This document shows, one piece after another, positions 8,471 to 35,969 of a stretch of 64,000 nucleotides of DNA (position 1 is its first letter; each line of letters opens with the position of its first letter). Both the position numbers and the translations under genes were made by a program. Origin of the DNA: Mytilus trossulus (lineage: Eukaryota); assembly GCF_036588685.1 (NCBI RefSeq), contig NC_086374.1, positions 48,112,001-48,176,000 on the forward strand, given 5' to 3'. The notes beneath the pieces are model-generated. The model was not told the origin of the DNA, searched no databases, and saw only the letters and a program-made list of their open reading frames with translations.

Positions 8471-9577
8471 TTTAGTACCACTGTTTGCATACTATCTAAA
8501 CATAATGAAGGTTTGCCAACTAAATTAATTTAATATTATTTAAATATAACATCTTCTTAGTTTTGCTTGTGTTTGTAACACTGCATTTAGTTCAAATAAA
8601 AAAAATCTCTATTACTAAAAAATTATTACACCAGGGTTTTCATTATCACAAACCAGTCATTACATTATCTAAATTTCATCATTGATACAAAGACATAATT
8701 AAAAAATAAATCAACATGCAAACTTCTTATATGTCATGTTCAGGACAATAAGGTATTTAATAACAAACCTTTTATGGTAATATACTATACAAAACACAAA
8801 AATGTTGTCATTCCTTAAAGCTAACAAAACCTAGTTATTCAGAAGGGATATCGATATATAGATATATTATTTTCTTTTATTTTTTAAAATAAATAAGGAC
8901 TTTAGTTTTCTCGTTTCAATTGTTTTACCTTGTATCATCAGGGCCTTTTAAAGCTGAGTATGCGTTATGGGCTTTACTCATTGTTAAAGGCTGTACGGTG
9001 ACCTAAAGTTGTTAATGTCTGTGTCATTTTAGTCTCTTGTGGAAAGATATCTCATTGACAATCATTATACCACATCTTCTTTTTTTTTTTTTTTTAAATA
9101 ATCCCATAATCCTGTTAGCCAAATTCCACAACTTCCAAATGGTTTTAACAAGTACCCCTGTTTCAACAGTTTATTAAAGAGTCTTTCAAACAAGTACCAC
9201 TTGTTTGCCTTAAAATTCCCAACATTCAATCATTAAAAAAACATATAAAAATAAGAATAAATAAAAATCTCATAATGACAATCAATACTTAAAAATATAA
9301 GGAATATATTCTTGACCATCTTTTGTGAAATAAAAAAATCATGCAAATCTAATACCATCTCTAAAAAGTAATAGTTTAATCAAGTTGAACAATTGCAACC
9401 TATCCAGAAACTAAATAGTGCTACATTTTTTATGAGTAAATAGCTATAGCCCATAAATAGTTTCCAAAAAGGAATACAAAAATCTTCAAAAAACACTTCA
9501 AGCCTGCTAACACCCATTTAAACATCATTATAAAATGTAACAAGTGCTTTTAAAATAAAAAGCAGTAACTCAACAAT

Positions 9578-26684: not shown

Positions 26685-27464
26685 TTGGACCCTCCCCCCC
26701 CCCCCCCCCCTTTTTTACCCTAGGTTGGGAACCCCAGTCTTAATGCTTATCCACAAGTCCTACAGCATTGATTGTAAAATTGCTCTCAGGCTTGTAAAAT
26801 TCTTCTCTACAAGCCAACAAAGTCCAACCAGACATATAATACAACATTGTATTATACTGTTCATTGTTTCTAATCCAACTAAAATTTTCAAAAAAATAAG
26901 TCTCTGGCTTCAAAACGCAAAAGTTAAGCGTAACGGCTGGAACCCCTTTTTAAAAATGTCTTAATTTGTCCCTAAGTGTTCTAATAGTAATAGTAGTCAA
27001 AAGAAATACGTTTCACATTCTTATTTATAAGTTGCAACATGTCGGTCATGGACATTTGTCATTTACATGTAACGTTAGGGCCTATAAATCACTTTTAAAC
27101 TAAAATTTAATTCCTTTTTTTAGTCGGTATTTAATGTTTAAAACTTACAAAAAAATAAGGAACATACTGTATACCATTTCACAGCATTATAATGTTCTAT
27201 ATCACCTATTATTTTAAAATTAAGACTCAGCAAATGGTTAGCGGTCAATATTTCCAGGGAAAGTTAGAGAAAACGGATGTTGACAACATGTGTATTTCCA
27301 GAGACAAGGACGGATACAATCCGAATTTAATTTTTCGCCATAAAATTGTTACCTAAAATAATATATTTATATCTAAATTTAATGTTTACAAACATACTAA
27401 ACAAAACGTAAAAAATATTTTTTGCAAACTGTGCAAACAGTACTTCAAAAAATAATGTTGGATA

Positions 27465-27670
27465 TGTAGTATTCGTAGGGTTAGTTTTAGGTCATCAGAC
27501 AGACCATCGAGAGATGTCCGAAGAACTACCCAGAAAGCATCCTCTTCCGGTTGAAACTACTAATGGCTACAGACGCTAATATTCACTAGAAGAGCAATCG
27601 GCCGTTCCTGACTGCAGGAACGACCATCCAAGGTATTTATCGGTCTCGAGATATACTCGGGGTCACAACA
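27465..27670 (+). repeat. LTR-C 5'
   Basis: TGTAGTATTC...GTCACAACA, identical to 31814-32019. Confidence 0.97.
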
Positions 27671-28193
27671 TTGGCGCTGCGAGCAATTAGCGGACAGTGT
27701 AATTGCTTGAAGTGATATTTTTTTATGTTTTTGCCGTTCAGGTTGCGAACGGCAAAAAATAGTAAGGCAGGAGGGGGAAAGGTGATTTGGTTTATTCCAG
27801 CGCGGGAATAAGTCATTTCAGGCACTCGTGGAGTATTTTGGAGGAATACTTCACGGTTGTTTAGGAGAAAGGATTGTGCAAGTAGACGTCAGGTTACCTT
27901 GCTGATCCTGGAGGGACAGCTGGGTAGCAGTCGACAAGTTATTGTTTTGTTTAGGTTACCAGTCGTGTTGTTATTGTTTTGTTTACCTCTGATAACTGCA
28001 GACCAGAAGGACGGGTTACCAGTCGTATTGTTATTATTTTGTTTACTCCGATAACCGCAGACCAGAAGGACGGGTTACCCGAAGCAGAAGTATTTGTGTT
28101 AGTCAATATATAAATTGTGGTTTAAGTGTGTTGTTTATTCTTTAAATAAATAAACTTTGTTATAAATTGTTGTTCAGTGATTTACAAAAACAA

Positions 28194-30272
28194 ATGTCAG
28201 TTGTAAACCTAAACACTTGTAGCTTTCAAGAGTTACTCCAGCTCCCAGGTATAGGCATACAAACTGGGGAGCAAATAATGGACATTAGGGAGAGCAAGGG
28301 CTATATGACCGAGTCAGACTTGGATACGATCTCCCAACTTCGAGTAACAAGGGGTCTCTTATCAAGGCTGGACTTCAGACCAAATGAAGGTGGCCCAAAT
28401 ATTCGGCCACCACCTCAGTCCCAAGTCAGGCATGGTGAGATGTTAAACATGGCACACATTGCCCCACAGGGCACTTCATCCCAAGTACAAGGCCAATCTG
28501 CATTTAGGCAAGAAGCATGGCCCCAGGGGCAAAGTCCCGGGCCCTTGGAAGGGCCCAGCCAGAGGGACTCTACCTTCCTTGAATATAGTCCATATCCTGG
28601 GGATGCTAATGCTAGACCTGAACCCACAGGGAATTGGGATGAGGGCTACAGGGAACCGTTACAGAAAAAAAAGTGGAGTCCCCATGATATTGGTGACCCA
28701 AACAAAGGTAGTCCCCCTCACCACATGTACAGGGGTAGTATTGGGAACAAGCCTGATTGGCCAGGTAAAAACAGTGTGTGGGACAAACGTACCCCAAACT
28801 ATTGGGGCACACCTTCACAACCCATGGGTCACGCATGCAACTATGCAGGTCAGGGGTCAGCACCCTGTACCCAACCAGCTTACACTGGTGGGGGACAGTA
28901 TGAGATGGCCTGTAGTAAGTATGGCAAGAGACAAGACAATAGGGGTGCAGACACAAGGCAGACCCCATCTCATGAGTATGGGGATAGGCAACCCAATAAC
29001 AAGTATAATCAAGGATATACAGCGGTGCCCCCACAAGGGGTCACCGCAGGGGTGAGCTATGGACAACAGGCCTACCCAGTACCATATAATGAGGACAGGC
29101 CTATAAAAAACCCAAGGGCACCTGACAACAGAGATGGGGCACACGGAACTTTAGGTGGCGTCTCTAGAGTTACCAGTGCCCCAAAAAATATTAAGTATGA
29201 CGGAAAGGGTAACTGGCAGGCCTTTTTCACAAAATTTGCTAGATACGCAGAGGTTTGTGAATGGGGTCCCCAGGAATGTAAAGACCAACTTTGCTGGTGC
29301 CTTGAGGGGAAGGCCAGCGAATATTATGCCCTCATAACGGAAAGGGACAGGGAGGTAAGTTATAGGGAGCTTGTGGAAAAGCTTCACAAGCGCTTTGGTT
29401 TCAAGGCACTCCCCGAGACCGCCGGGTTCAGTTTAACAATGCTCTGCAAGCCCCTGAGGAGTCTCTTGAGGACTGGGCTGATCGGGTGTTATCCTTGGCC
29501 ACCAGGGCATTTAGAAACCTCCCTGATGACTATATGTATGAGCAAGCCGTAATGCGGCTGTGCCAGGGTATTGAAAACAAACAGTTGGGAGTGCAAGTCT
29601 CTAACCTTCAGCCCCAAAGTATTGAGGAGGCCGTAGATAAAATACGGCTGTTCCAACACAACACACAGGCAATATATGGCAAGCCAAACAGGCGTGAGGT
29701 TAGGCAAGTAACTGATGGGCAGTATGAAGCCCACCATGAGGCCTTCCACGAGTATCAGGGGCCCCATGTAAGGGATACAATGGCCATCGAGGGGGCCCCA
29801 TGTAAGGGATACAATGGCCATCGAGGGGGCCCCAGCCAGTACATGGAAAGTGGAGTTAGAAAAGTCTAATAAGAAGTTTGAAAACAAACTTAGTCAAGTC
29901 AACGAAAAATTAGACGACATGATGGACCAATTCAAGCAACTCCTTACAAGCCCCATTGCAGGAAGTTGTTCACCTGGCAGACAGTCAGGGACAGAAAGTT
30001 GCCACCACTGTGGGGAGAGGGGCCATTCCAAAATGGAATGCCCAAACTTAAGAGGTAAGTCCGTCTCAGGGAGTCCCTCCACTGATAGAGGGCCTCCATT
30101 GGAGGGAGTGTGCTACCACGGTTTAAAGCCTGGACATGTTAGGAAGGACTGTCTTTATTTACAGGGGAGGGATAAAACTGTTTCCTTTATAAATCAGTCA
30201 AGCAGAACTGCAACAGTACCATTAAACTTAAACGGGACTACTCAGGAGGCCAGAGTGAGTCCCTGCAAATGA
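28194..30272 (+). pseudogene. gag: Gag with N-terminal helix-hairpin-helix domain, capsid-like domain and two zinc knuckles (two frameshifts)
   Basis: HhH: VNLNTCSFQELLQLPGIG. Gag core: KYDGKGNWQAF..W...CLEGKA and ESLEDWADRVLSLATRAF. Knuckles: CHHCGERGHSKMEC and degenerate CYHGLKPGHVRKDC. Frameshifts at ~29425 and from a 34-bp duplication at 29761-29830. Confidence 0.88.
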
Positions 30273-31582
30273 AGTTAGGCCTCTCGGTAGTTGAGTCTGT
30301 ACCCCAAGGCAGAGTAGTGGAGGTAGCTATAGGGAGCCCAGGGGTATGTGCAAGGGACAGAGAGGGAAACAGAGAACCCCGTGTGTCGGTACAGGTTAAA
30401 GCAGAGATTGAGTCAGAGCAGTGCTCCGATTCTGACAAAGAGGCAACTCCTGCAGGCGGCTTGGACTGCTACTTATTAAGATGTCTCACGAACATATTGA
30501 GGCATTGTGCACCAGAGTTTAACCACAGCTTTCTTCCAGGTGGGTATTTGTTGGTTGAGGAAATCCTTAAAAGGGACCCAGGCTTTGCGAAGTACTCCTT
30601 ACTTGATATTCATCAACTGATTAAGGTTGATGTGGACAGTAGGTTCACTTTAATAAAGGACACAGACAGTGACTGTTGGAAAATAAGGGTCAACCAGGGG
30701 TATTCCTTGATGGTGGATATCCCAGCTACACCATCAGTAGAGAAATACGAGGTGCCCCAAGGCAATTTAGTTGCTCCAGCATTGCTCACATCGGACCAAG
30801 AGGGTTCAGTGGCCAATATAATTAGAAAACCCATAGGAGCTGCTATTTTGGCCATTGAGAATAATAGTGACATTCAAAAGGTTGCTGTCCCAACAGAGAC
30901 AACGTTGGTAAGTGATGCGGAGGCCCAAGAAAGTTGGGACTCCACCTCCGACGGTGAGGCTCCTACCACTTTGGTAGAAGGGGCCAGTAATGAGAAGATA
31001 GTCACAGTTTTCCCTACTCCTGTTGTTGACGGAGGAATGACTGACAATACTGAAAACAGTCCTACATCCCTCACTTTTGATGACCCTTCCTCAACAGGAG
31101 GAACTGACAGAAAAGTCGCAACAGAAAGCAACAGTTGGCTCAACAATGAAAAAGTTATAACTTTCAAATCATCTGTCAACCAGGAATCTGTATACATTAA
31201 TCCAGAAAGCCCTGATTCAGGATTAGGGCTACTTTTTAAAACAGATAATGTTGGCACTAGGTATTTCAATCTGCAGCAGCCACCACCAGTAGACAGTGGG
31301 ACATCAGCCTTTTGTGTGAGCACAGTTAGATCGGGTCCCAACAGAAGACAATGGGATCCTGGAATTCCCTACCCAAACAAAGGTATAAATTCATTGCAAG
31401 TGAGGAAAAATGAAACAAGACTCTTCACGACGGAGAATGGATCAGCACAACCTCCTGGGTCCAACTATGTAGTGGACACGCAGCTTCTAAATGGCCTGTT
31501 TCTAGTTGGTATAAAGATGGTGAAAAGTTGGCATACGGTCCAGACTAGAACAATTCACAGTTTTCTGGGTTCCCAATTTTAG
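30269..31582 (+). CDS. ORF2 with Tpt1/KptA (TRPT1, RNA 2'-phosphotransferase) N-terminal RNA-lobe domain (30464-30718) plus a low-complexity S/T/E tail
   Basis: LLRCLTNILRHCA..PGGYLLVEEIL..FAKYSLLDIHQLI..DSRFTL..KIRVNQGYSLMV matches the Tpt1 pattern LS..LRH..DG(F/W)V....L....RF....IRANQGHS..V. No HGT NAD-lobe motif. The frame is open from 30176 and is -1 relative to gag. Confidence 0.8.
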   Translation: MKLGLSVVESVPQGRVVEVAIGSPGVCARDREGNREPRVSVQVKAEIESEQCSDSDKEATPAGGLDCYLLRCLTNILRHCAPEFNHSFLPGGYLLVEEILKRDPGFAKYSLLDIHQLIKVDVDSRFTLIKDTDSDCWKIRVNQGYSLMVDIPATPSVEKYEVPQGNLVAPALLTSDQEGSVANIIRKPIGAAILAIENNSDIQKVAVPTETTLVSDAEAQESWDSTSDGEAPTTLVEGASNEKIVTVFPTPVVDGGMTDNTENSPTSLTFDDPSSTGGTDRKVATESNSWLNNEKVITFKSSVNQESVYINPESPDSGLGLLFKTDNVGTRYFNLQQPPPVDSGTSAFCVSTVRSGPNRRQWDPGIPYPNKGINSLQVRKNETRLFTTENGSAQPPGSNYVVDTQLLNGLFLVGIKMVKSWHTVQTRTIHSFLGSQF

Positions 31583-31813
31583 GGAACCCATTGTACTAAA
31601 TTTTAGTTAATCAGTAGACCCATGGATACAAAGGGTCGTTTTGGGGGATAGGTTTTATACTTTTTAAAAATTGTTAGGGGGATAGGATGTATACTTTAAA
31701 ATCGATGCTTATTTTTTCAAAATTTGGTATTATTTCAGTATTTTATTGATTTTGGGCGAAAAACACAGGGCCCCCATCATTAGAGGGGGCCTTATTAATA
31801 AAACTGGGGGGAG

Positions 31814-32019
31814 TGTAGTATTCGTAGGGTTAGTTTTAGGTCATCAGACAGACCATCGAGAGATGTCCGAAGAACTACCCAGAAAGCATCCTCTTCCGGT
31901 TGAAACTACTAATGGCTACAGACGCTAATATTCACTAGAAGAGCAATCGGCCGTTCCTGACTGCAGGAACGACCATCCAAGGTATTTATCGGTCTCGAGA
32001 TATACTCGGGGTCACAACA
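31814..32019 (+). repeat. LTR-C 3'
   Basis: Identical to the 5' LTR and followed by TSD GATA. Confidence 0.97.
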
Positions 32020-32289
32020 GATAGATTGGTGAATAAAACATACAAAAATAAATATTGGTGAACTCGGCTAAATTGGCAAACTTCAGTAAGTTGGCAAATA
32101 TTACAGATACACATTGCATCTATGCATGGCAAGCATTAATGTTTTCCTGAATGTTTGCAACCAAGCGAACAGTATTAGTTTGTAAATGTTTGCGAATAGT
32201 AATGACTACATAAATACTGGCAATGATAGCGACGCTGGCGATATTTGAATGAATTTGTAAATGTTAGCGAACAGTATTAAGTTTCGTAA

Positions 32290-33100
32290 ATGTTGGCGAC
32301 ATTGACGAACAGTTATGAGTTCATAAATGTTGGCGATGTTGGCAAACAGTAATGTTTCATAAATGTTGGCGACGTTGGCGAACAGTACAGTTTGTAAATG
32401 TTGGCAACGTTGGCGACGTTGGTGAACAGTGATGTTTCATAAATGTTGGCGATGTTGGGGACGTTGGCGAACAGTTATGAGTTTGTAAATGTTGGCGCAT
32501 TGGAGAACTGTAATGTTTCATAAATGTTGGCGACGTTGGCGAACAGTATTGAGTTCATAAATGTTGGCGACGTTGGCTAACAGTATTGAGTTCATCAATG
32601 TTGGCAACGTTGGCGACGTTGGCGAACAGTATTGAGTTCATAAATGTTGGCGATGTTGGCGACGTTGGCGAACAGTATTGAGTTCATAAATGTTGGCGAC
32701 GTTGGCAAACAGTATTGAGTTCATAAATGTTGGCGACGTTGGCGAACAGTATTGAGTTCATAAATGTTGGCGACGTTGGCGAACAGTATTGAGTTCATAA
32801 ATGTTGGTGACGTTGGCGAACAGTATTGAGTTCATAAATGTTGGCGACGTTGGCGAACAGTATTGAGTTCATAAATGTTGGCGACGTTGGCGAACAGTAT
32901 TGAGTTCATAAATGTTGGCGACGTTGGCGACGTTGGCGAACAGTATTGAGTTCATAAATGTTGGCGACGTTGGCGACGTTGGCGAACAGTATTGAGTTCA
33001 TAAATGTTGGCGACGTTGGCGAACAGTATTGAGTTCATAAATGTTGGCGACGTTGGCGAATAGTAAGGATTTCGTAAATGTTGGCGACGTTGGCGACATT
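32290..33100 (-). repeat. Right subterminal tandem array (37/46-bp units)
   Basis: Unit AAATGTTGGCGACGTTGGCGAACAGTATTGAGTTCAT. Its core is the reverse complement of the left array core. Confidence 0.95.
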
Positions 33101-33132
33101 TGCGAACATTTACACAATCCTGTACCAGAATG

Positions 33133-35969
33133 GAAAAAGTATCTACAGATAATCCACGAAAGTTCTGGGATGAGTTGAACAAATTGGGCCCGAAAAGGAA
33201 GAAAGATATACCTATGGAGTGTGATATAGGCGGTGGTAATATAACGTGTGATAGATCGGAAGTTTTACAGAAATGGGAATATGATTTGTCGAATTTGTAT
33301 AAAAAAGTAAATATGACATCTGATGATACATTTTACGCACATGCTATGTAACATGTTCCTGGAGCACAATATGTTATACACTCTTTTTGAGCCAAACGAA
33401 AAATTAAATGGAACGATTTTGATCGAAGAAGTGAAGAAGGTTTTTTTTAATTCTAAAGACGGAAAATCGCCAGGCATTGACCTGTTGCATTATGAAGTTT
33501 TGAAGAATAATAGTGTTATATCTGTGTTACATAAGCTATTTCAATTATGTTTCGAAACTACCTTCAGTATGGGGAAAGGCTATAATTCATCCAATTCCAA
33601 AATGTACACAATTAGATCAGAGAGTTCCATTAAACTACCGTGGTATAAGTCTGTTTCTGTAGTAGCTTAGTGTTACAATTCGGTTTTAAACAACAGATTG
33701 CAAAACTTTTTAGAAGAAAATGATTCAATTGTTGACGAACAGAACGGATTTCGAAAAGATCGACCATTTTGGACCATGTCTTTACATTAAACAGTATGAT
33801 TCAAAATCGGAAGTCAACCTTTGTAACTTTCGTTGATTTGCAGAAAGCATTTGACTTCGTTGATCTCAACTTGTTGCAGTACAAACTTAGATTGAATGGA
33901 ATAGATGGTTACATGTACAATGCTATATCCAGTTTATATGTTATCACTGAGTCTTGTGTGCGTGTAAGGGGACGACCATTTGATATTCTGGGGGGGGGGG
34001 AGGATTTTGAAAATAAATAACTCAGCCTTGATAATCACAAAAATAAATGGTTTGTTCTGTGGTAGTTTGAAAATAAATTACCTGACTTTCAATGTATTGA
34101 AAATAAATAACTCAGCAGGTCTATAGCTTATTGGGCCTTCAGCAGTTCCAAAACCCTGCAAACAATTTTTTTTTTCGTTCAGAAAATTATAAAATACTTA
34201 ATCCGATAATACCAATTGTCTTATAATATACTTATTACTATGTATTTGTGTTTCGTTTGTCCTGTCTCGCTATGTATTATCTTAAAATATTTGTATATAT
34301 TGTCCTCTTGTACACAAGTATGTGTCTGAGGTTATGAATGAAATCTTGAATCTTACAATTTCTGAAGGGGATGATCTACTAGTATTCTGATTAAATGGTA
34401 CACAATGACTTGACTATACATGTATTAATGGTTTGCCTTTTTTTAAATGGTTATTTGGATGGAGTGTTGTCTCAATGGCACTAACACCACATCTTCCTAT
34501 ATCTAATTATTCATAATTAACAAATATTTAAAAAAAATGTATGTTTTTCGAATATCATAAATATAGTGGTAAAAATGAATGATCAGTCCCTTGCTTTAAT
34601 GAAAATGAAAAACCTTGCTTCAAAAGTGCAGAAAATGAATAATCTGTCCTCTCAGTTTACAAAAATAAATAACCGATCAAAAACAAATCCTCCCCCCAGA
34701 ATATCAAATGGTCGTCGATTCCAAACAAACTGGTTCCCTTGTGTAAATGGTGTCCGACAGGGAGACAGCCTTTCGTCGACGCTTTTTTCGATCTTTATTA
34801 ATGACTTAGCTGTTGAGATTAAAAATTTAAACATGGGTATCCCGGTAGAAAATGAAAAAAAAACAGTATATTGTTGTACGCCGATGGTATTGCTTTAGTG
34901 ACTGAAAACGAACGCGATATGCAAGTTGTTCTTGACGTACTTAATAAATGGTGTGAGAAATGGAGATTAAACGTAAATAGTGCAAAATCAAGTGTTATGC
35001 ACTTCCGGAAAGGTCGAATTCAACGGACCAGTTCAACATTCAAAATTGGAATTGAACAACTACAAATCGTTAAGCAATACAAGTACCTGGGCGTTATTTT
35101 TAGCGAGAAACTTAAGTATACTGCTGCTGCGGATGCATTTGCCAAAGCTGGTGGTAGAGCACTTGATGCTGCCATTTACAAAGTTCATTCATACAAGGAA
35201 ATTGGATTTAAAACCTTTGAAACTGTGTTTATGTTTAACTTCTGTGTCAGCCCTGTTTTAGATTATTGCTCTGGTGTTTGGGGCTACAATACTTTTCATG
35301 GCATTGATATGATACAAAACCGAGCAGTACGATATTTCTGTGGTTTACATCGGTTTGCACCCACTATAGCATTAAACAGTGAACTTGGCTGGCTACCACC
35401 AACGCAAAGACATTGGTTAAATATGGTACGCCTATGGAACCGTCTCATTCTTATGAACGACGAGGGACTCACGAAAAAAGTTTTCGAGTGGGAGTATAAG
35501 AATAAGATATATGGACATCTTTAATAAACTTGGTTTAAGTAACCTCTATGAAACAAAACAAATAGTGGACGTACAAGAAGCTAAAGAAAAACTTTAATGT
35601 TATACTGAAAGTGAATGGAAATACAAATCTGCTTTATCACCGAAACTACGAACATTTGTGACCTTCAAAAAAAATTACGAACTAGAACAGTATATCACAT
35701 CAAATCTGTCTAAACAAGAACGATCGGCTCTTTCCCAATTAAGATGTGGGATTCTTCCTATACGCATTGAGACTGGAAGGTTCCGTTACGAAGCGCTACC
35801 AGAACGAAAATGTGTACTGTGTGAAAAGCAGGAGGTCGAAGATGAAAAACATTTTATGTTAAACTGTCCATGTTATGACAAACTTAGACAAAGGTTTCTA
35901 TCTATGGCCGCATTAGACAATTTTAGTGACAATAACGAAAAACTTATCCATTTATTGAAAAACTATCAA
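33133..35969 (+). pseudogene. LINE ORF2 reverse transcriptase and C-terminal zinc finger (frameshifted, interrupted by a MITE)
   Basis: DNPRKFWD, GKSPGID, EQNGFR, FVDLQKAFD, GVRQGDSLSSTLF, LYADG (YADD mutated), YKYLG, LRCGILPIRIETGR, CVLC..EDEKHFMLNC. Confidence 0.92.
33968..34716. mobile_element. PIF/Harbinger-like MITE with the right tip deleted
   Basis: TAA|GGGGACGACCATTTGATATTCTGGGGGG on the left and CCCCCCAGAATATCAAATGGTCGTC on the right. AAAATAAATAA subrepeats. Interrupts LINE SCVRV..FQTNWF. Confidence 0.8.

What the first reader, a model, noticed from the sequence alone, without database searches (positions are those of the whole stretch)
27465..32019. Pol-less LTR retroelement carrying a Tpt1/KptA (tRNA 2'-phosphotransferase) domain in place of pol
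Seen: a complete young element (identical 206-bp LTRs, GATA TSD, tRNA-Ser-like PBS, PPT) with gag but no protease, RT, RNase H or integrase. ORF2 aa 66-150 (30464-30718) reads LTNILRHCA..GGYLLVEEIL..SRFTL..IRVNQGYSLMV. Known: the Tpt1/KptA/TRPT1 RNA lobe has LRH...RF...IRANQGHS, and its Arg-His-Arg-Arg tetrad binds the RNA 2'-phosphate. All four residues are present here (R78, H79, R125, R140). Similarity stops just before the HGT motif of the NAD lobe. Inference: this is a captured, probably non-catalytic phosphate-end or tRNA-binding module. It could recruit or protect the tRNA primer or RNA/cDNA ends, or act as a decoy against host RNA ADP-ribosylation or end-processing. I know of no described LTR family with this architecture.
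Basis: partly seen in the sequence, partly recalled or inferred. Interest (0 to 1): 0.93.

Follow-up and report, generated by a model that had tools for sequence, protein, structure and literature searches.

The report
Pol-less mussel retroelement with Tpt1 remnant
This is a recently active, non-autonomous mussel LTR retrotransposon that keeps only the RNA-binding half of a Tpt1/TRPT1 enzyme, inherited from a so far undescribed Ty3/gypsy lineage whose polymerase polyprotein begins with a complete host-derived Tpt1 domain.

Summary
The window carries a 4,555-bp element with identical 206-bp LTRs, a GATA target duplication, a PBS, a PPT and gag. It has no protease, RT, RNase H or integrase. ORF2 aa 71-151 match Pfam PTS_2-RNA (E 5.6e-9) and fold like the TRPT1 RNA lobe.

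One detail is wrong. R140 is not the fourth catalytic arginine; that residue lies in the missing NAD lobe.

The domain was not captured by this element. The same genome holds an autonomous Ty3/gypsy family whose Pol reads Tpt1(complete)-PR-RT-RH-INT-PHD. It shares LTR ends, PBS, PPT and gag with the window family. Three recombinant copies tie the two families together.

A Mytilus coruscus protein shows the same ORF2 with its NAD lobe still present. The window family therefore descends from an older pol-less Gag+Tpt1 lineage by an in-frame deletion.

At least ten copies have their own target duplications and near-identical LTRs. The RNA lobe evolves at pN/pS about 0.4.

A second, unrelated retroelement carries Tpt1 between RNase H and integrase. 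I found no paper describing Tpt1 in retrotransposons. What the domain does is inferred, not shown. The scan had separately noted the TatD gene of the autonomous family elsewhere in this genome.

The parts
27461..27464 (+). Target-site duplication GATA, left copy
   Evidence: The same 4 bases follow the 3' LTR at 32020-32023.
27465..27670 (+). 5' LTR, 206 bp, TG...CA ends
   Evidence: 206/206 identical to 31814-32019. About 12 terminal bases at one end and about 15 at the other are shared with the 193-bp LTR of the autonomous family.
27672..27685 (+). Primer binding site, 14 nt
   Evidence: Complementary to the tRNA gene 3' end ...CTGCTCGCAGCG plus CCA, which has 381 matches in the genome in tandem arrays. 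The same PBS occurs in the autonomous family.
27922..28079 (+). 5' UTR direct repeats (33-43 nt units)
   Evidence: the repeat finder families D6 and D7. The units are shared with the autonomous family.
28194..30272 (+). gag, in three frame pieces in this copy (28167-29552, 29486-29869, 29814-30272): N-terminal HHH, capsid-like core, zinc knuckle
   Evidence: Pfam HHH_3 E 2.3e-7 and zf-CCHC. It is 76% identical in DNA to the autonomous gag. Sibling copies have one open frame of 697 or 710 codons.
29758..29825 (+). Exact 34-bp tandem duplication, private to this copy, shifting the gag frame
   Evidence: the repeat finder D8. Contigs of three other runs skip one unit. Sibling copies are about 33 bp shorter.
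30221..30233 (+). Candidate -1 frameshift site, N-TTA-AAC twice in the gag frame, inside the 93-nt gag/ORF2 overlap
   Evidence: The TTAAAC motif is conserved in the overlap in all copies of both families. This is a motif-level inference only.
30269..31582 (+). ORF2 (437 aa), in the -1 frame relative to gag; its ATG overlaps the gag stop
   Evidence: The frame is open for 474 codons in 7 of 9 young copies. It is homologous over its whole length to the M. coruscus protein P0004.
30464..30721 (+). Tpt1/TRPT1 RNA (N-terminal) lobe, a winged helix, ORF2 aa 66-151
   Evidence: PF01885 E 5.6e-9. AF2 pLDDT is above 90 over aa 67-141, and Foldseek matches 7yw2 at E 1.8e-7, rmsd 1.8 A. It is 40% identical to the autonomous Pol aa 71-196.
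30758..30769 (+). Junction of the in-frame deletion that removed the NAD lobe (about ORF2 aa 165/166)
   Evidence: ORF2 aa 1-165 align with P0004 1-168 and aa 161-413 with P0004 259-519. P0004 residues 169-263, the NAD lobe, have no counterpart.
30770..31582 (+). ORF2 tail, no known domain. Part of it (aa about 204-247) matches the Tpt1-PR linker of the autonomous Pol
   Evidence: No Pfam match. tblastx to L031 4940-5071. 52% identical to the P0004 tail. pN/pS 0.45-0.87.
31800..31813 (+). Polypurine tract
   Evidence: A purine run abutting the 3' LTR. The same CTGGGGGGAG tract occurs in the autonomous copy L033.
31814..32019 (+). 3' LTR
32020..32023 (+). Target-site duplication GATA, right copy

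Best explanation
The window element belongs to a non-autonomous LTR retrotransposon family of a Mytilus mussel. It encodes its own Gag and, in the -1 frame, an ORF2 left over from the start of Pol. ORF2 holds a short leader, the RNA-binding (N) lobe of a Tpt1/TRPT1 domain, and a tail without known domains.

Shown:
(1) An autonomous Ty3/gypsy family in the same genome has Pol = complete Tpt1 - PR - RT - RNase H - INT - PHD. It shares LTR termini, PBS, PPT, 5'-UTR repeats and gag with the window family.
(2) Recombinant copies join window-type LTRs and 3' half to an autonomous-type 5' UTR and 5' gag at 99-100% identity, and these copies have themselves transposed. RNAs of the two families therefore meet in one particle, and the pol-less family is copied by the autonomous family's enzymes.
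(3) The window ORF2 equals an older pol-less ORF2 (Tpt1 plus the same tail) minus an in-frame block of about 95 residues, which is the NAD lobe.
(4) Without the NAD lobe and the fourth catalytic Arg, the remnant cannot be an enzyme.

Inferred:
- ORF2 is made as a Gag-ORF2 fusion by -1 frameshifting at a conserved TTAAAC motif and enters particles.
- Its winged-helix lobe binds RNA or phosphate ends. Most plausibly it binds the primer tRNA or 5'-phosphate ends of replication intermediates, and this helps the family's own propagation.
- In the autonomous lineage the full domain was taken from an animal, probably molluscan, TRPT1 gene. It acts on nucleic-acid phosphates in the particle, either by 5'-phosphate ADP-ribose capping or by 2'-phosphate removal.
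For: Element anatomy.

Tpt1 lobe: Pfam E 5.6e-9, PDB sequence match, fold match.

Autonomous relative L031:
- Gag is 709 aa and Pol 1787 aa. Pfam finds PTS_2-RNA positions 4-177 of 177 at E 1.3e-35, followed by PR, RVT_1, RT_RNaseH, Integrase_H2C2, rve and PHD.
- The AF2 model has pLDDT 90.7 and TM 0.87 to mouse TRPT1.
- At least five copies have an open 1819-codon pol frame.
- It shares PBS, PPT and LTR ends with the window family.

Recombinants L007-L009: sliding identity switches from window type to 99-100% autonomous type and back. Each has its own target duplication and identical LTRs.

Recent activity: ten copies have distinct 4-bp duplications and LTR pairs 205-206/206 identical.

Deletion of the NAD lobe.

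Selection:
- RNA lobe pN/pS is 0.39-0.45 (p 0.007-0.012) against three diverged copies.
- Whole ORF2 is 0.47-0.75.
- The autonomous Tpt1 is 0.16, from 4 non-synonymous and 7 synonymous changes.

Same architecture elsewhere: P0025 is Tpt1-PR-RT-RH, with RT 58% identical. Its Tpt1 is 54% identical to a snail TRPT1 and groups with the Mytilus clade at 81/74 support.

Independent second case: P0080/P0152 is PR-RT-RH-Tpt1-INT, with RT only 31% identical.

RNA-lobe-only repeats exist in annelid and chiton proteins.
Against: - No expression data. The runs that hold the element are only guessed to be RNA, and their contigs show many different flanks, as DNA would.
- Among the nine young copies, changes in ORF2 run 22 non-synonymous to 12 synonymous, which is not distinguishable from weak or no constraint.
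- The first tetrad Arg is Lys in the diverged copy L010, and the QGHS His is Tyr in the family.
- The three pN/pS comparisons share one reference copy, so they are not independent.
- The autonomous NAD lobe is remodelled: HGT is HYT, the donor loop is 6 residues shorter and lacks the Ser-Gly that matters in mouse TRPT1, and the Asn/Val that sandwich nicotinamide are Ser/Ala. Even the full domain may therefore not be a normal enzyme.
- The frameshift site is a motif match only.
Confidence: 0.7

Rival explanations
1. The Tpt1 lobe and tail are a functionless leftover. The family only needs its LTRs, PBS, PPT, packaging signals and perhaps Gag. ORF2 stays open because the copies are young and because the region carries cis-acting RNA signals (frameshift region, packaging or dimerisation).
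For: Young copies show no clear excess of synonymous changes. Catalytic and conserved residues drift: Arg to Lys in L010, His to Tyr in QGHS, and loss of the conserved Lys before RF. The NAD lobe could be lost without stopping amplification.
Against: pN/pS is below 1 in the lobe and the tail against three diverged copies. ORF2, tail included, is conserved at 52-66% identity with a Mytilus coruscus homologue, and the NAD-lobe deletion kept the frame.
Confidence: 0.25
2. One reading: a pol-less element directly captured part of the host TRPT1 gene, for example one exon, by template switching or transduction.
For: The host genome has TRPT1-like exon-sized matches to PF01885 covering only the RNA lobe (positions about 25-92) at several loci. 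Partial copies therefore exist.
Against: The lobe is 40% identical to the autonomous Pol and 55-66% identical to other Mytilus retroelement ORFs, against 20-30% to animal TRPT1. It sits at the same place relative to gag and the frameshift overlap as in the autonomous Pol. A homologue with both lobes and the same tail exists.
Confidence: 0.03
3. ORF2 is a parasite-side or host-facing decoy. A catalytically dead RNA lobe fused to Gag competes with the autonomous element's Tpt1, or with host TRPT1, for the same RNA or DNA ends. This would bias packaging or priming toward the pol-less RNA, or block ADP-ribosylation of ends.
For: Dead-enzyme architecture with the substrate-binding lobe kept. The pol-less family has at least as many very young copies as the autonomous one among the loci read.
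Against: No direct evidence. It cannot be told apart computationally from the simple binding-module idea.
Confidence: 0.1

Closest known systems
Tpt1 / KptA / TRPT1 (Pfam PF01885), NAD+-dependent RNA 2'-phosphotransferase and 5'-phosphate ADP-ribosyltransferase
   Same: The window ORF2 has the RNA lobe: a winged helix with the LRH and RF motifs and 3 of 4 tetrad residues. The autonomous relative has both lobes and all four tetrad residues, and its model superposes on mouse TRPT1 at TM 0.87.
   Different: The window copy lacks the whole NAD lobe, so it cannot be the enzyme. The autonomous domain is embedded in a retroelement Pol and has a remodelled NAD lobe: HYT, a short donor loop, and Ser/Ala in place of Asn/Val.
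Gag-encoding non-autonomous LTR elements mobilised by an autonomous partner (BARE2/BARE1 in barley; more loosely LARD and TRIM). Named from my own knowledge.
   Same: LTR ends, PBS and PPT are shared with an autonomous family. There is no RT or integrase. There are many recent insertions and recombinants with the partner.
   Different: This family keeps an open second ORF, made from the first Pol domain plus a conserved tail, that shows signs of constraint.
Ty3/gypsy elements with an acquired host enzyme domain, e.g. orchid elements with an AlkB-type m6A RNA demethylase domain (PMC9289625, seen; abstract only)
   Same: A host nucleic-acid-modifying enzyme domain is fixed inside a Ty3/gypsy element.
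   Different: A different enzyme family, a different host kingdom and a different position. Here the domain is at the Pol N-terminus and was acquired at least twice in different positions.
Chromoviruses (Ty3/gypsy with a chromodomain after integrase). Named from my own knowledge.
   Same: The autonomous partner has a chromatin-reader-type domain, a PHD finger, at the C-terminal end of Pol.
   Different: A PHD finger instead of a chromodomain. This does not apply to the window copy, which has no integrase.

Membership tests
Tpt1/KptA/TRPT1 (PF01885) | N-terminal RNA lobe (winged helix) with the LRH and RF motifs | tested here: met
   Pfam positions 8-86 of 177, E 5.6e-9. AF2 plus Foldseek match 7yw2 at rmsd 1.8 A over 81 columns.
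Tpt1/KptA/TRPT1 (PF01885) | C-terminal NAD+ lobe (HGT motif, R-x-H-x-H motif, donor loop) | tested here: not met
   Absent from the window ORF2. The alignment with P0004 shows an in-frame gap of about 95 residues. It is present, though remodelled, in the autonomous relative.
Tpt1/KptA/TRPT1 (PF01885) | Catalytic tetrad Arg-His-Arg-Arg (yeast R23, H24, R71, R138; PMC6097658) | tested here: not met
   The window has R78, H79 and R125 only. R140 aligns with yeast C85. The autonomous Pol has all four.
Tpt1/KptA/TRPT1 (PF01885) | NAD+-dependent 2'-phosphate removal or 5'-phosphate ADP-ribosylation activity | not testable with these tools
   Needs biochemistry.
LTR retrotransposon, Ty3/gypsy type | LTRs with TG...CA ends, target duplication, PBS next to the 5' LTR, PPT next to the 3' LTR | tested here: met
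LTR retrotransposon, Ty3/gypsy type | Pol with PR-RT-RNase H-INT in that order | tested here: not met
   None is present in the window element. All are present in the autonomous relative L031.
Non-autonomous LTR element with an autonomous partner | Shares the cis signals of a partner that supplies RT and integrase | tested here: met
   Same PBS, PPT and LTR termini. gag is 76% identical, with a stretch at 95-100%.
Non-autonomous LTR element with an autonomous partner | Evidence of mobilisation in trans | tested here: met
   Ten copies have their own target duplications and identical or near-identical LTRs although no RT or INT is encoded. Three transposed recombinants with the partner exist. 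This is indirect; no experiment was done.

The most novel reading that the evidence does not exclude
LTR retroelements of molluscs have taken up the host TRPT1 enzyme at least twice because a Tpt1 activity on nucleic-acid phosphates is useful in the retroelement replication cycle. That activity could be ADP-ribose capping of 5'-phosphate RNA or cDNA ends, or removal of 2'-phosphates. The RNA lobe alone has then been kept in a pol-less lineage as a non-catalytic module fused to Gag that binds primer tRNA or nucleic-acid ends. If so, these elements would give the first biological context for the long-unexplained TRPT1 activity in animals.
Probability: 0.2. Interest if true: 0.85.

Novelty: new variant of a known kind. 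Interest (0 to 1): 0.62.

Why it matters
Animal TRPT1 is conserved, but its role is unclear because animal tRNA splicing leaves no 2'-phosphate. This rests on my own knowledge and on the abstracts of PMC6097658 and PMC12678800.

A retroelement lineage starts its Pol with a host-derived TRPT1 domain. A second, unrelated lineage carries the domain between RNase H and integrase. A pol-less offshoot keeps only the RNA lobe under some constraint. Together these point to a link between Tpt1 chemistry and reverse-transcription intermediates (tRNA primers, 5'-phosphate ends). That link can be tested with purified domains.

Practically, Mytilus genome annotations label many fragments of these elements as TRPT1/TPT1 genes. 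This inflates the apparent gene family.

Tried and rejected
- Chance similarity is rejected. Pfam scores above the curated cut-off, and PDB sequence and fold matches agree.
- Direct host capture by this element is rejected (see rivals).
- A word-indexed search for long Pol-like proteins, using the Tpt1 part of the autonomous Pol, found nothing. The exhaustive HMMER search did find them, so the blank was a sensitivity limit.
- The ORF2 tail has no Pfam family. It has no similarity to the autonomous element beyond the Tpt1-PR linker.
- Expression could not be shown. The runs are only guessed to be RNA and are held as contigs.
- Polymorphism among the young copies gave too few changes to be informative.
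- The 76-row careful tree did not finish in two tries. A 36-row careful tree was used instead. Rows left out were fragments, long-branch unknowns, and most vertebrate, insect and fungal duplicates. The place of the retroelement clade among animal TRPT1s stays unresolved.
- No canonical X-XXY-YYZ heptamer lies at the gag stop. Only the conserved N-TTA-AAC motif was found.
- The tRNA isotype of the primer was not determined.

As a result the host TRPT1 locus, the other PF01885 loci, the 3' ends of L031/L032 and the tRNA array could not be read, and I did not try to reach them another way.


Full report
**What is in the window.** The element spans 27465-32019.
- Its LTRs (27465-27670 and 31814-32019) are 206/206 identical and have TG...CA ends. 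GATA flanks both sides.
- One base after the 5' LTR lies a 14-nt PBS (27672-27685). Its complement plus CCA equals the 3' end of a tRNA gene family with 381 matches in this genome, mostly in tandem arrays. The T-stem and the G discriminator fit tRNA-Ser from what I know, but the isotype was not tested.
- A purine tract (31800-31813) abuts the 3' LTR.
- gag carries an N-terminal helix-hairpin-helix (Pfam E 2.3e-7) and a zinc knuckle.
- ORF2 (30269-31582, 437 aa) lies in the -1 frame, and its ATG overlaps the gag stop.
- No protease, RT, RNase H or integrase was found by Pfam or by tblastn with a related Pol.

**The Tpt1 match is real.**
- ORF2 aa 71-151 match PF01885 positions 8-86 of 177 at E 5.6e-9, 36.7 bits against a cut-off of 26.
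- They match mouse, human and yeast TRPT1 chains by sequence.
- In an AlphaFold model only aa 67-141 are confident (pLDDT above 90). They form a winged helix that superposes on the RNA lobe of mouse TRPT1 (7yw2) at rmsd 1.8 A over 81 columns, E 1.8e-7. The next 50 residues are unstructured.

The essential tetrad is yeast Arg23, His24, Arg71 and Arg138 (PMC6097658).
- The window has the first three: R78, H79 and R125.
- R140 aligns with yeast Cys85 in the IRANQGHS motif.
- The true fourth Arg belongs to the R-x-H-I-H-L motif of the NAD lobe, which is missing.
- The QGHS histidine is tyrosine in this family.

**This copy is slightly damaged.**
- Its gag frame breaks near 29421, where it differs in length by one base from other copies.
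- It breaks again at an exact 34-bp tandem duplication (29758-29825) that contigs from other samples and the sibling copies lack.
- There is another single-base length difference near 31579.
- Seven of nine young copies have one open gag frame (697 or 710 codons) and an open 474-codon ORF2 frame in -1.

**The family is recently active without enzymes of its own.** A DNA search of the whole assembly found five copies at 98-100% identity over the full length (the window's own among them), four more at 90-96% over most of it, and older, more diverged copies. The assembly is 1.3 Gb, and the window is C2:48112001-48176000. Ten copies examined each have a different 4-bp target duplication. The eight young ones have LTR pairs 205-206/206 identical.

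**The autonomous partner.** A group of loci matched only gag (76%) and the LTR end/PBS. Extending one of them (L031) showed two reading frames:
- a 709-aa Gag with HHH, Retrotrans_gag and two zinc knuckles;
- in -1, a 1787-aa Pol with PTS_2-RNA positions 4-177 of 177 (E 1.3e-35, aa 85-252), then aspartyl protease, RVT_1, RT_RNaseH, Integrase_H2C2, rve and a C-terminal PHD finger.

Further points on this family:
- At least five copies have an open 1819-codon pol frame.
- Its 193-bp LTR shares about 12 terminal bases at one end and about 15 at the other with the window LTR. The PBS and PPT are the same.
- Its Tpt1 model has pLDDT 90.7 and matches mouse TRPT1 at TM 0.87, rmsd 1.9 A.
- It keeps all four tetrad residues and the two histidines of the H-H-h motif.
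- Its NAD lobe is remodelled. HGT is HYT. The donor loop is six residues shorter and lacks the Ser-Gly pair that is needed in mouse TRPT1. The Asn/Val that sandwich nicotinamide are Ser/Ala (residue roles from PMC10415124). Normal catalysis is therefore uncertain.
- Between two diverged copies the domain shows 4 non-synonymous and 7 synonymous changes, pN/pS 0.16.

**The two families meet in one particle.** Copies L007-L009 have window-type LTRs. From just after the PBS to about the middle of gag they are 99-100% identical to the autonomous family. After that they are 97-100% window type. Each has its own target duplication and identical LTRs. Such recombinants are what template switching between co-packaged RNAs gives (established retroviral biology). 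This is the best available evidence that the autonomous family copies the pol-less one.

**Origin of ORF2.**
- ORF2 aa 53-178 align with Pol aa 71-196 of the partner (40% identity), and aa about 204-247 align with the Tpt1-PR linker.
- A closer relative is the Mytilus coruscus protein P0004, annotated TRPT1 (526 aa). Window aa 1-165 match its 1-168 at 66% identity, and aa 161-413 match its 259-519 at 52%.
- Its residues 169-263, the NAD lobe, have no counterpart in the window. P0004 ends with the same tail and has no protease or RT.
- So a pol-less ORF2 made of a whole Tpt1 domain plus tail existed first. The window family then lost the NAD lobe by an in-frame deletion.
- In P0004 the R-x-H-x-H motif already reads RQYIPL, which suggests catalysis was given up before the lobe was deleted.

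**Selection.** One young copy was compared with three diverged copies.

| Region | pN/pS | p (one-sided) |
|---|---|---|
| RNA lobe | 0.39, 0.45, 0.42 | 0.012, 0.010, 0.007 |
| Whole ORF2 | 0.47-0.75 | not listed here |
| gag | 0.38-0.66 | not listed here |

The three comparisons share a reference and include post-insertion decay, so they are indicative only. Among the nine young copies the counts (22 non-synonymous, 12 synonymous in ORF2) say little.

**Expression route.** The -1 frame is open for 93 nt upstream of the gag stop in the window family and for 75 nt in the partner. Both overlaps hold a conserved N-TTA-AAC in the gag frame, in every copy read. I take this as a candidate slippery site. 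It is not tested.

**Wider distribution.**
- An exhaustive HMMER search with the partner's Tpt1 domain found many Mytilus edulis, M. coruscus and M. galloprovincialis proteins annotated TRPT1/TPT1. These are fragments of such elements, at up to 100% identity, so the window is from a Mytilus species.
- P0025, from a metagenome contig, reads Tpt1-PR-RT-RH. Its RT-RH is 58% identical to the partner and it has canonical HGT and donor-loop motifs. Its Tpt1 is 54% identical to a snail TRPT1 and groups with the Mytilus retroelement clade at 81/74 support in a careful 36-row tree. This fits a single uptake of a molluscan-type TRPT1 followed by fast divergence in Mytilus.
- P0080/P0152 reads PR-RT-RH-Tpt1-INT. 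Its RT is only 31% identical and its Tpt1 sits on a separate long branch. I read this as a second, independent uptake.
- Full-text searches found no paper that links Tpt1/KptA/TRPT1 with LTR retrotransposons.

**How it most likely works.** Shown and inferred steps are separated under Best explanation.
- For the window family I think a Gag-ORF2 fusion carries a catalytically dead RNA lobe into particles built with the partner's proteins.
- There it binds RNA. Primer tRNA or 5'-phosphate ends are the natural candidates, because tRNA and phosphate ends are what Tpt1 lobes bind.
- I give the structural and evolutionary account about 0.85 and the binding role about 0.35-0.4.
- The main rival is that ORF2 is a leftover kept open by youth and by cis-acting RNA needs.

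**Limits.**
- As a result the host TRPT1 locus, the other PF01885 loci, the 3' ends of L031/L032 and the tRNA array were not read.

Noticed in passing
L033:7797-9307 (autonomous copy, between pol and the 3' LTR): The autonomous family carries a third gene with a TatD-related DNase domain: PF01026 E 4.7e-22 on 8852-9307, and a weaker piece on 8499-8780. It is split over frames in this copy. Two earlier notes of the scan describe a TatD gene in the env position of gypsy elements elsewhere in this genome. I found no paper on TatD in LTR retrotransposons.
   Followed up: partly
L031:3926-9289 (Pol aa 1715-1761) and window 28194-28380: The autonomous Pol ends in a PHD finger (E 3.4e-8), where chromoviruses have a chromodomain. 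Gag of both families starts with a ComEA-like helix-hairpin-helix.
   Followed up: partly
L033:7477-7879: Tandem units of 51 bp, each holding a GGGGTGTC...GACACCCC inverted pair, just downstream of pol in the autonomous copy. Function unknown.
   Followed up: no
window 32188-33133: A 37-bp satellite (units with 9-bp expansions) starts about 170 bp after the element's 3' end.
   Followed up: no
proteins P0006, P0011 (Owenia fusiformis), P0033 (Liolophura sinensis), P0023: Proteins made of tandem Tpt1 RNA lobes without NAD lobes: ten in P0006, four plus one full domain in P0011. The RNA lobe is therefore used as a stand-alone repeat module in lophotrochozoans.
   Followed up: partly
proteins P0014, P0028, P0032, P0038, P0048: The canonical, high-scoring Tpt1 domain of bivalves sits inside long host proteins of 690-1016 aa with isoforms (Mytilus, Sinanodonta, Dreissena, Mizuhopecten, Ostrea). 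No short TRPT1 of about 210 aa from a bivalve appeared in the lists.
   Followed up: no
proteins P0001-P0016, P0157-P0162: Public Mytilus annotations name fragments of these retroelements TRPT1 or TPT1, and one chimera is named ADAM10. P0029 joins a zinc knuckle to the Tpt1 lobe, which is the predicted Gag-Pol junction.
   Followed up: partly
G000:C8:7773964-7810926 and C185: A large tandem array of tRNA genes with periods of about 315 and 423 bp. Their 3' ends match the PBS of both element families.
   Followed up: no
L001 element positions about 1771-2069 (window about 29235-29533): Within gag, the pol-less and autonomous families are 95-100% identical over about 300 bp, against 60-85% on either side. 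This looks like an older exchange between the two families.
   Followed up: no
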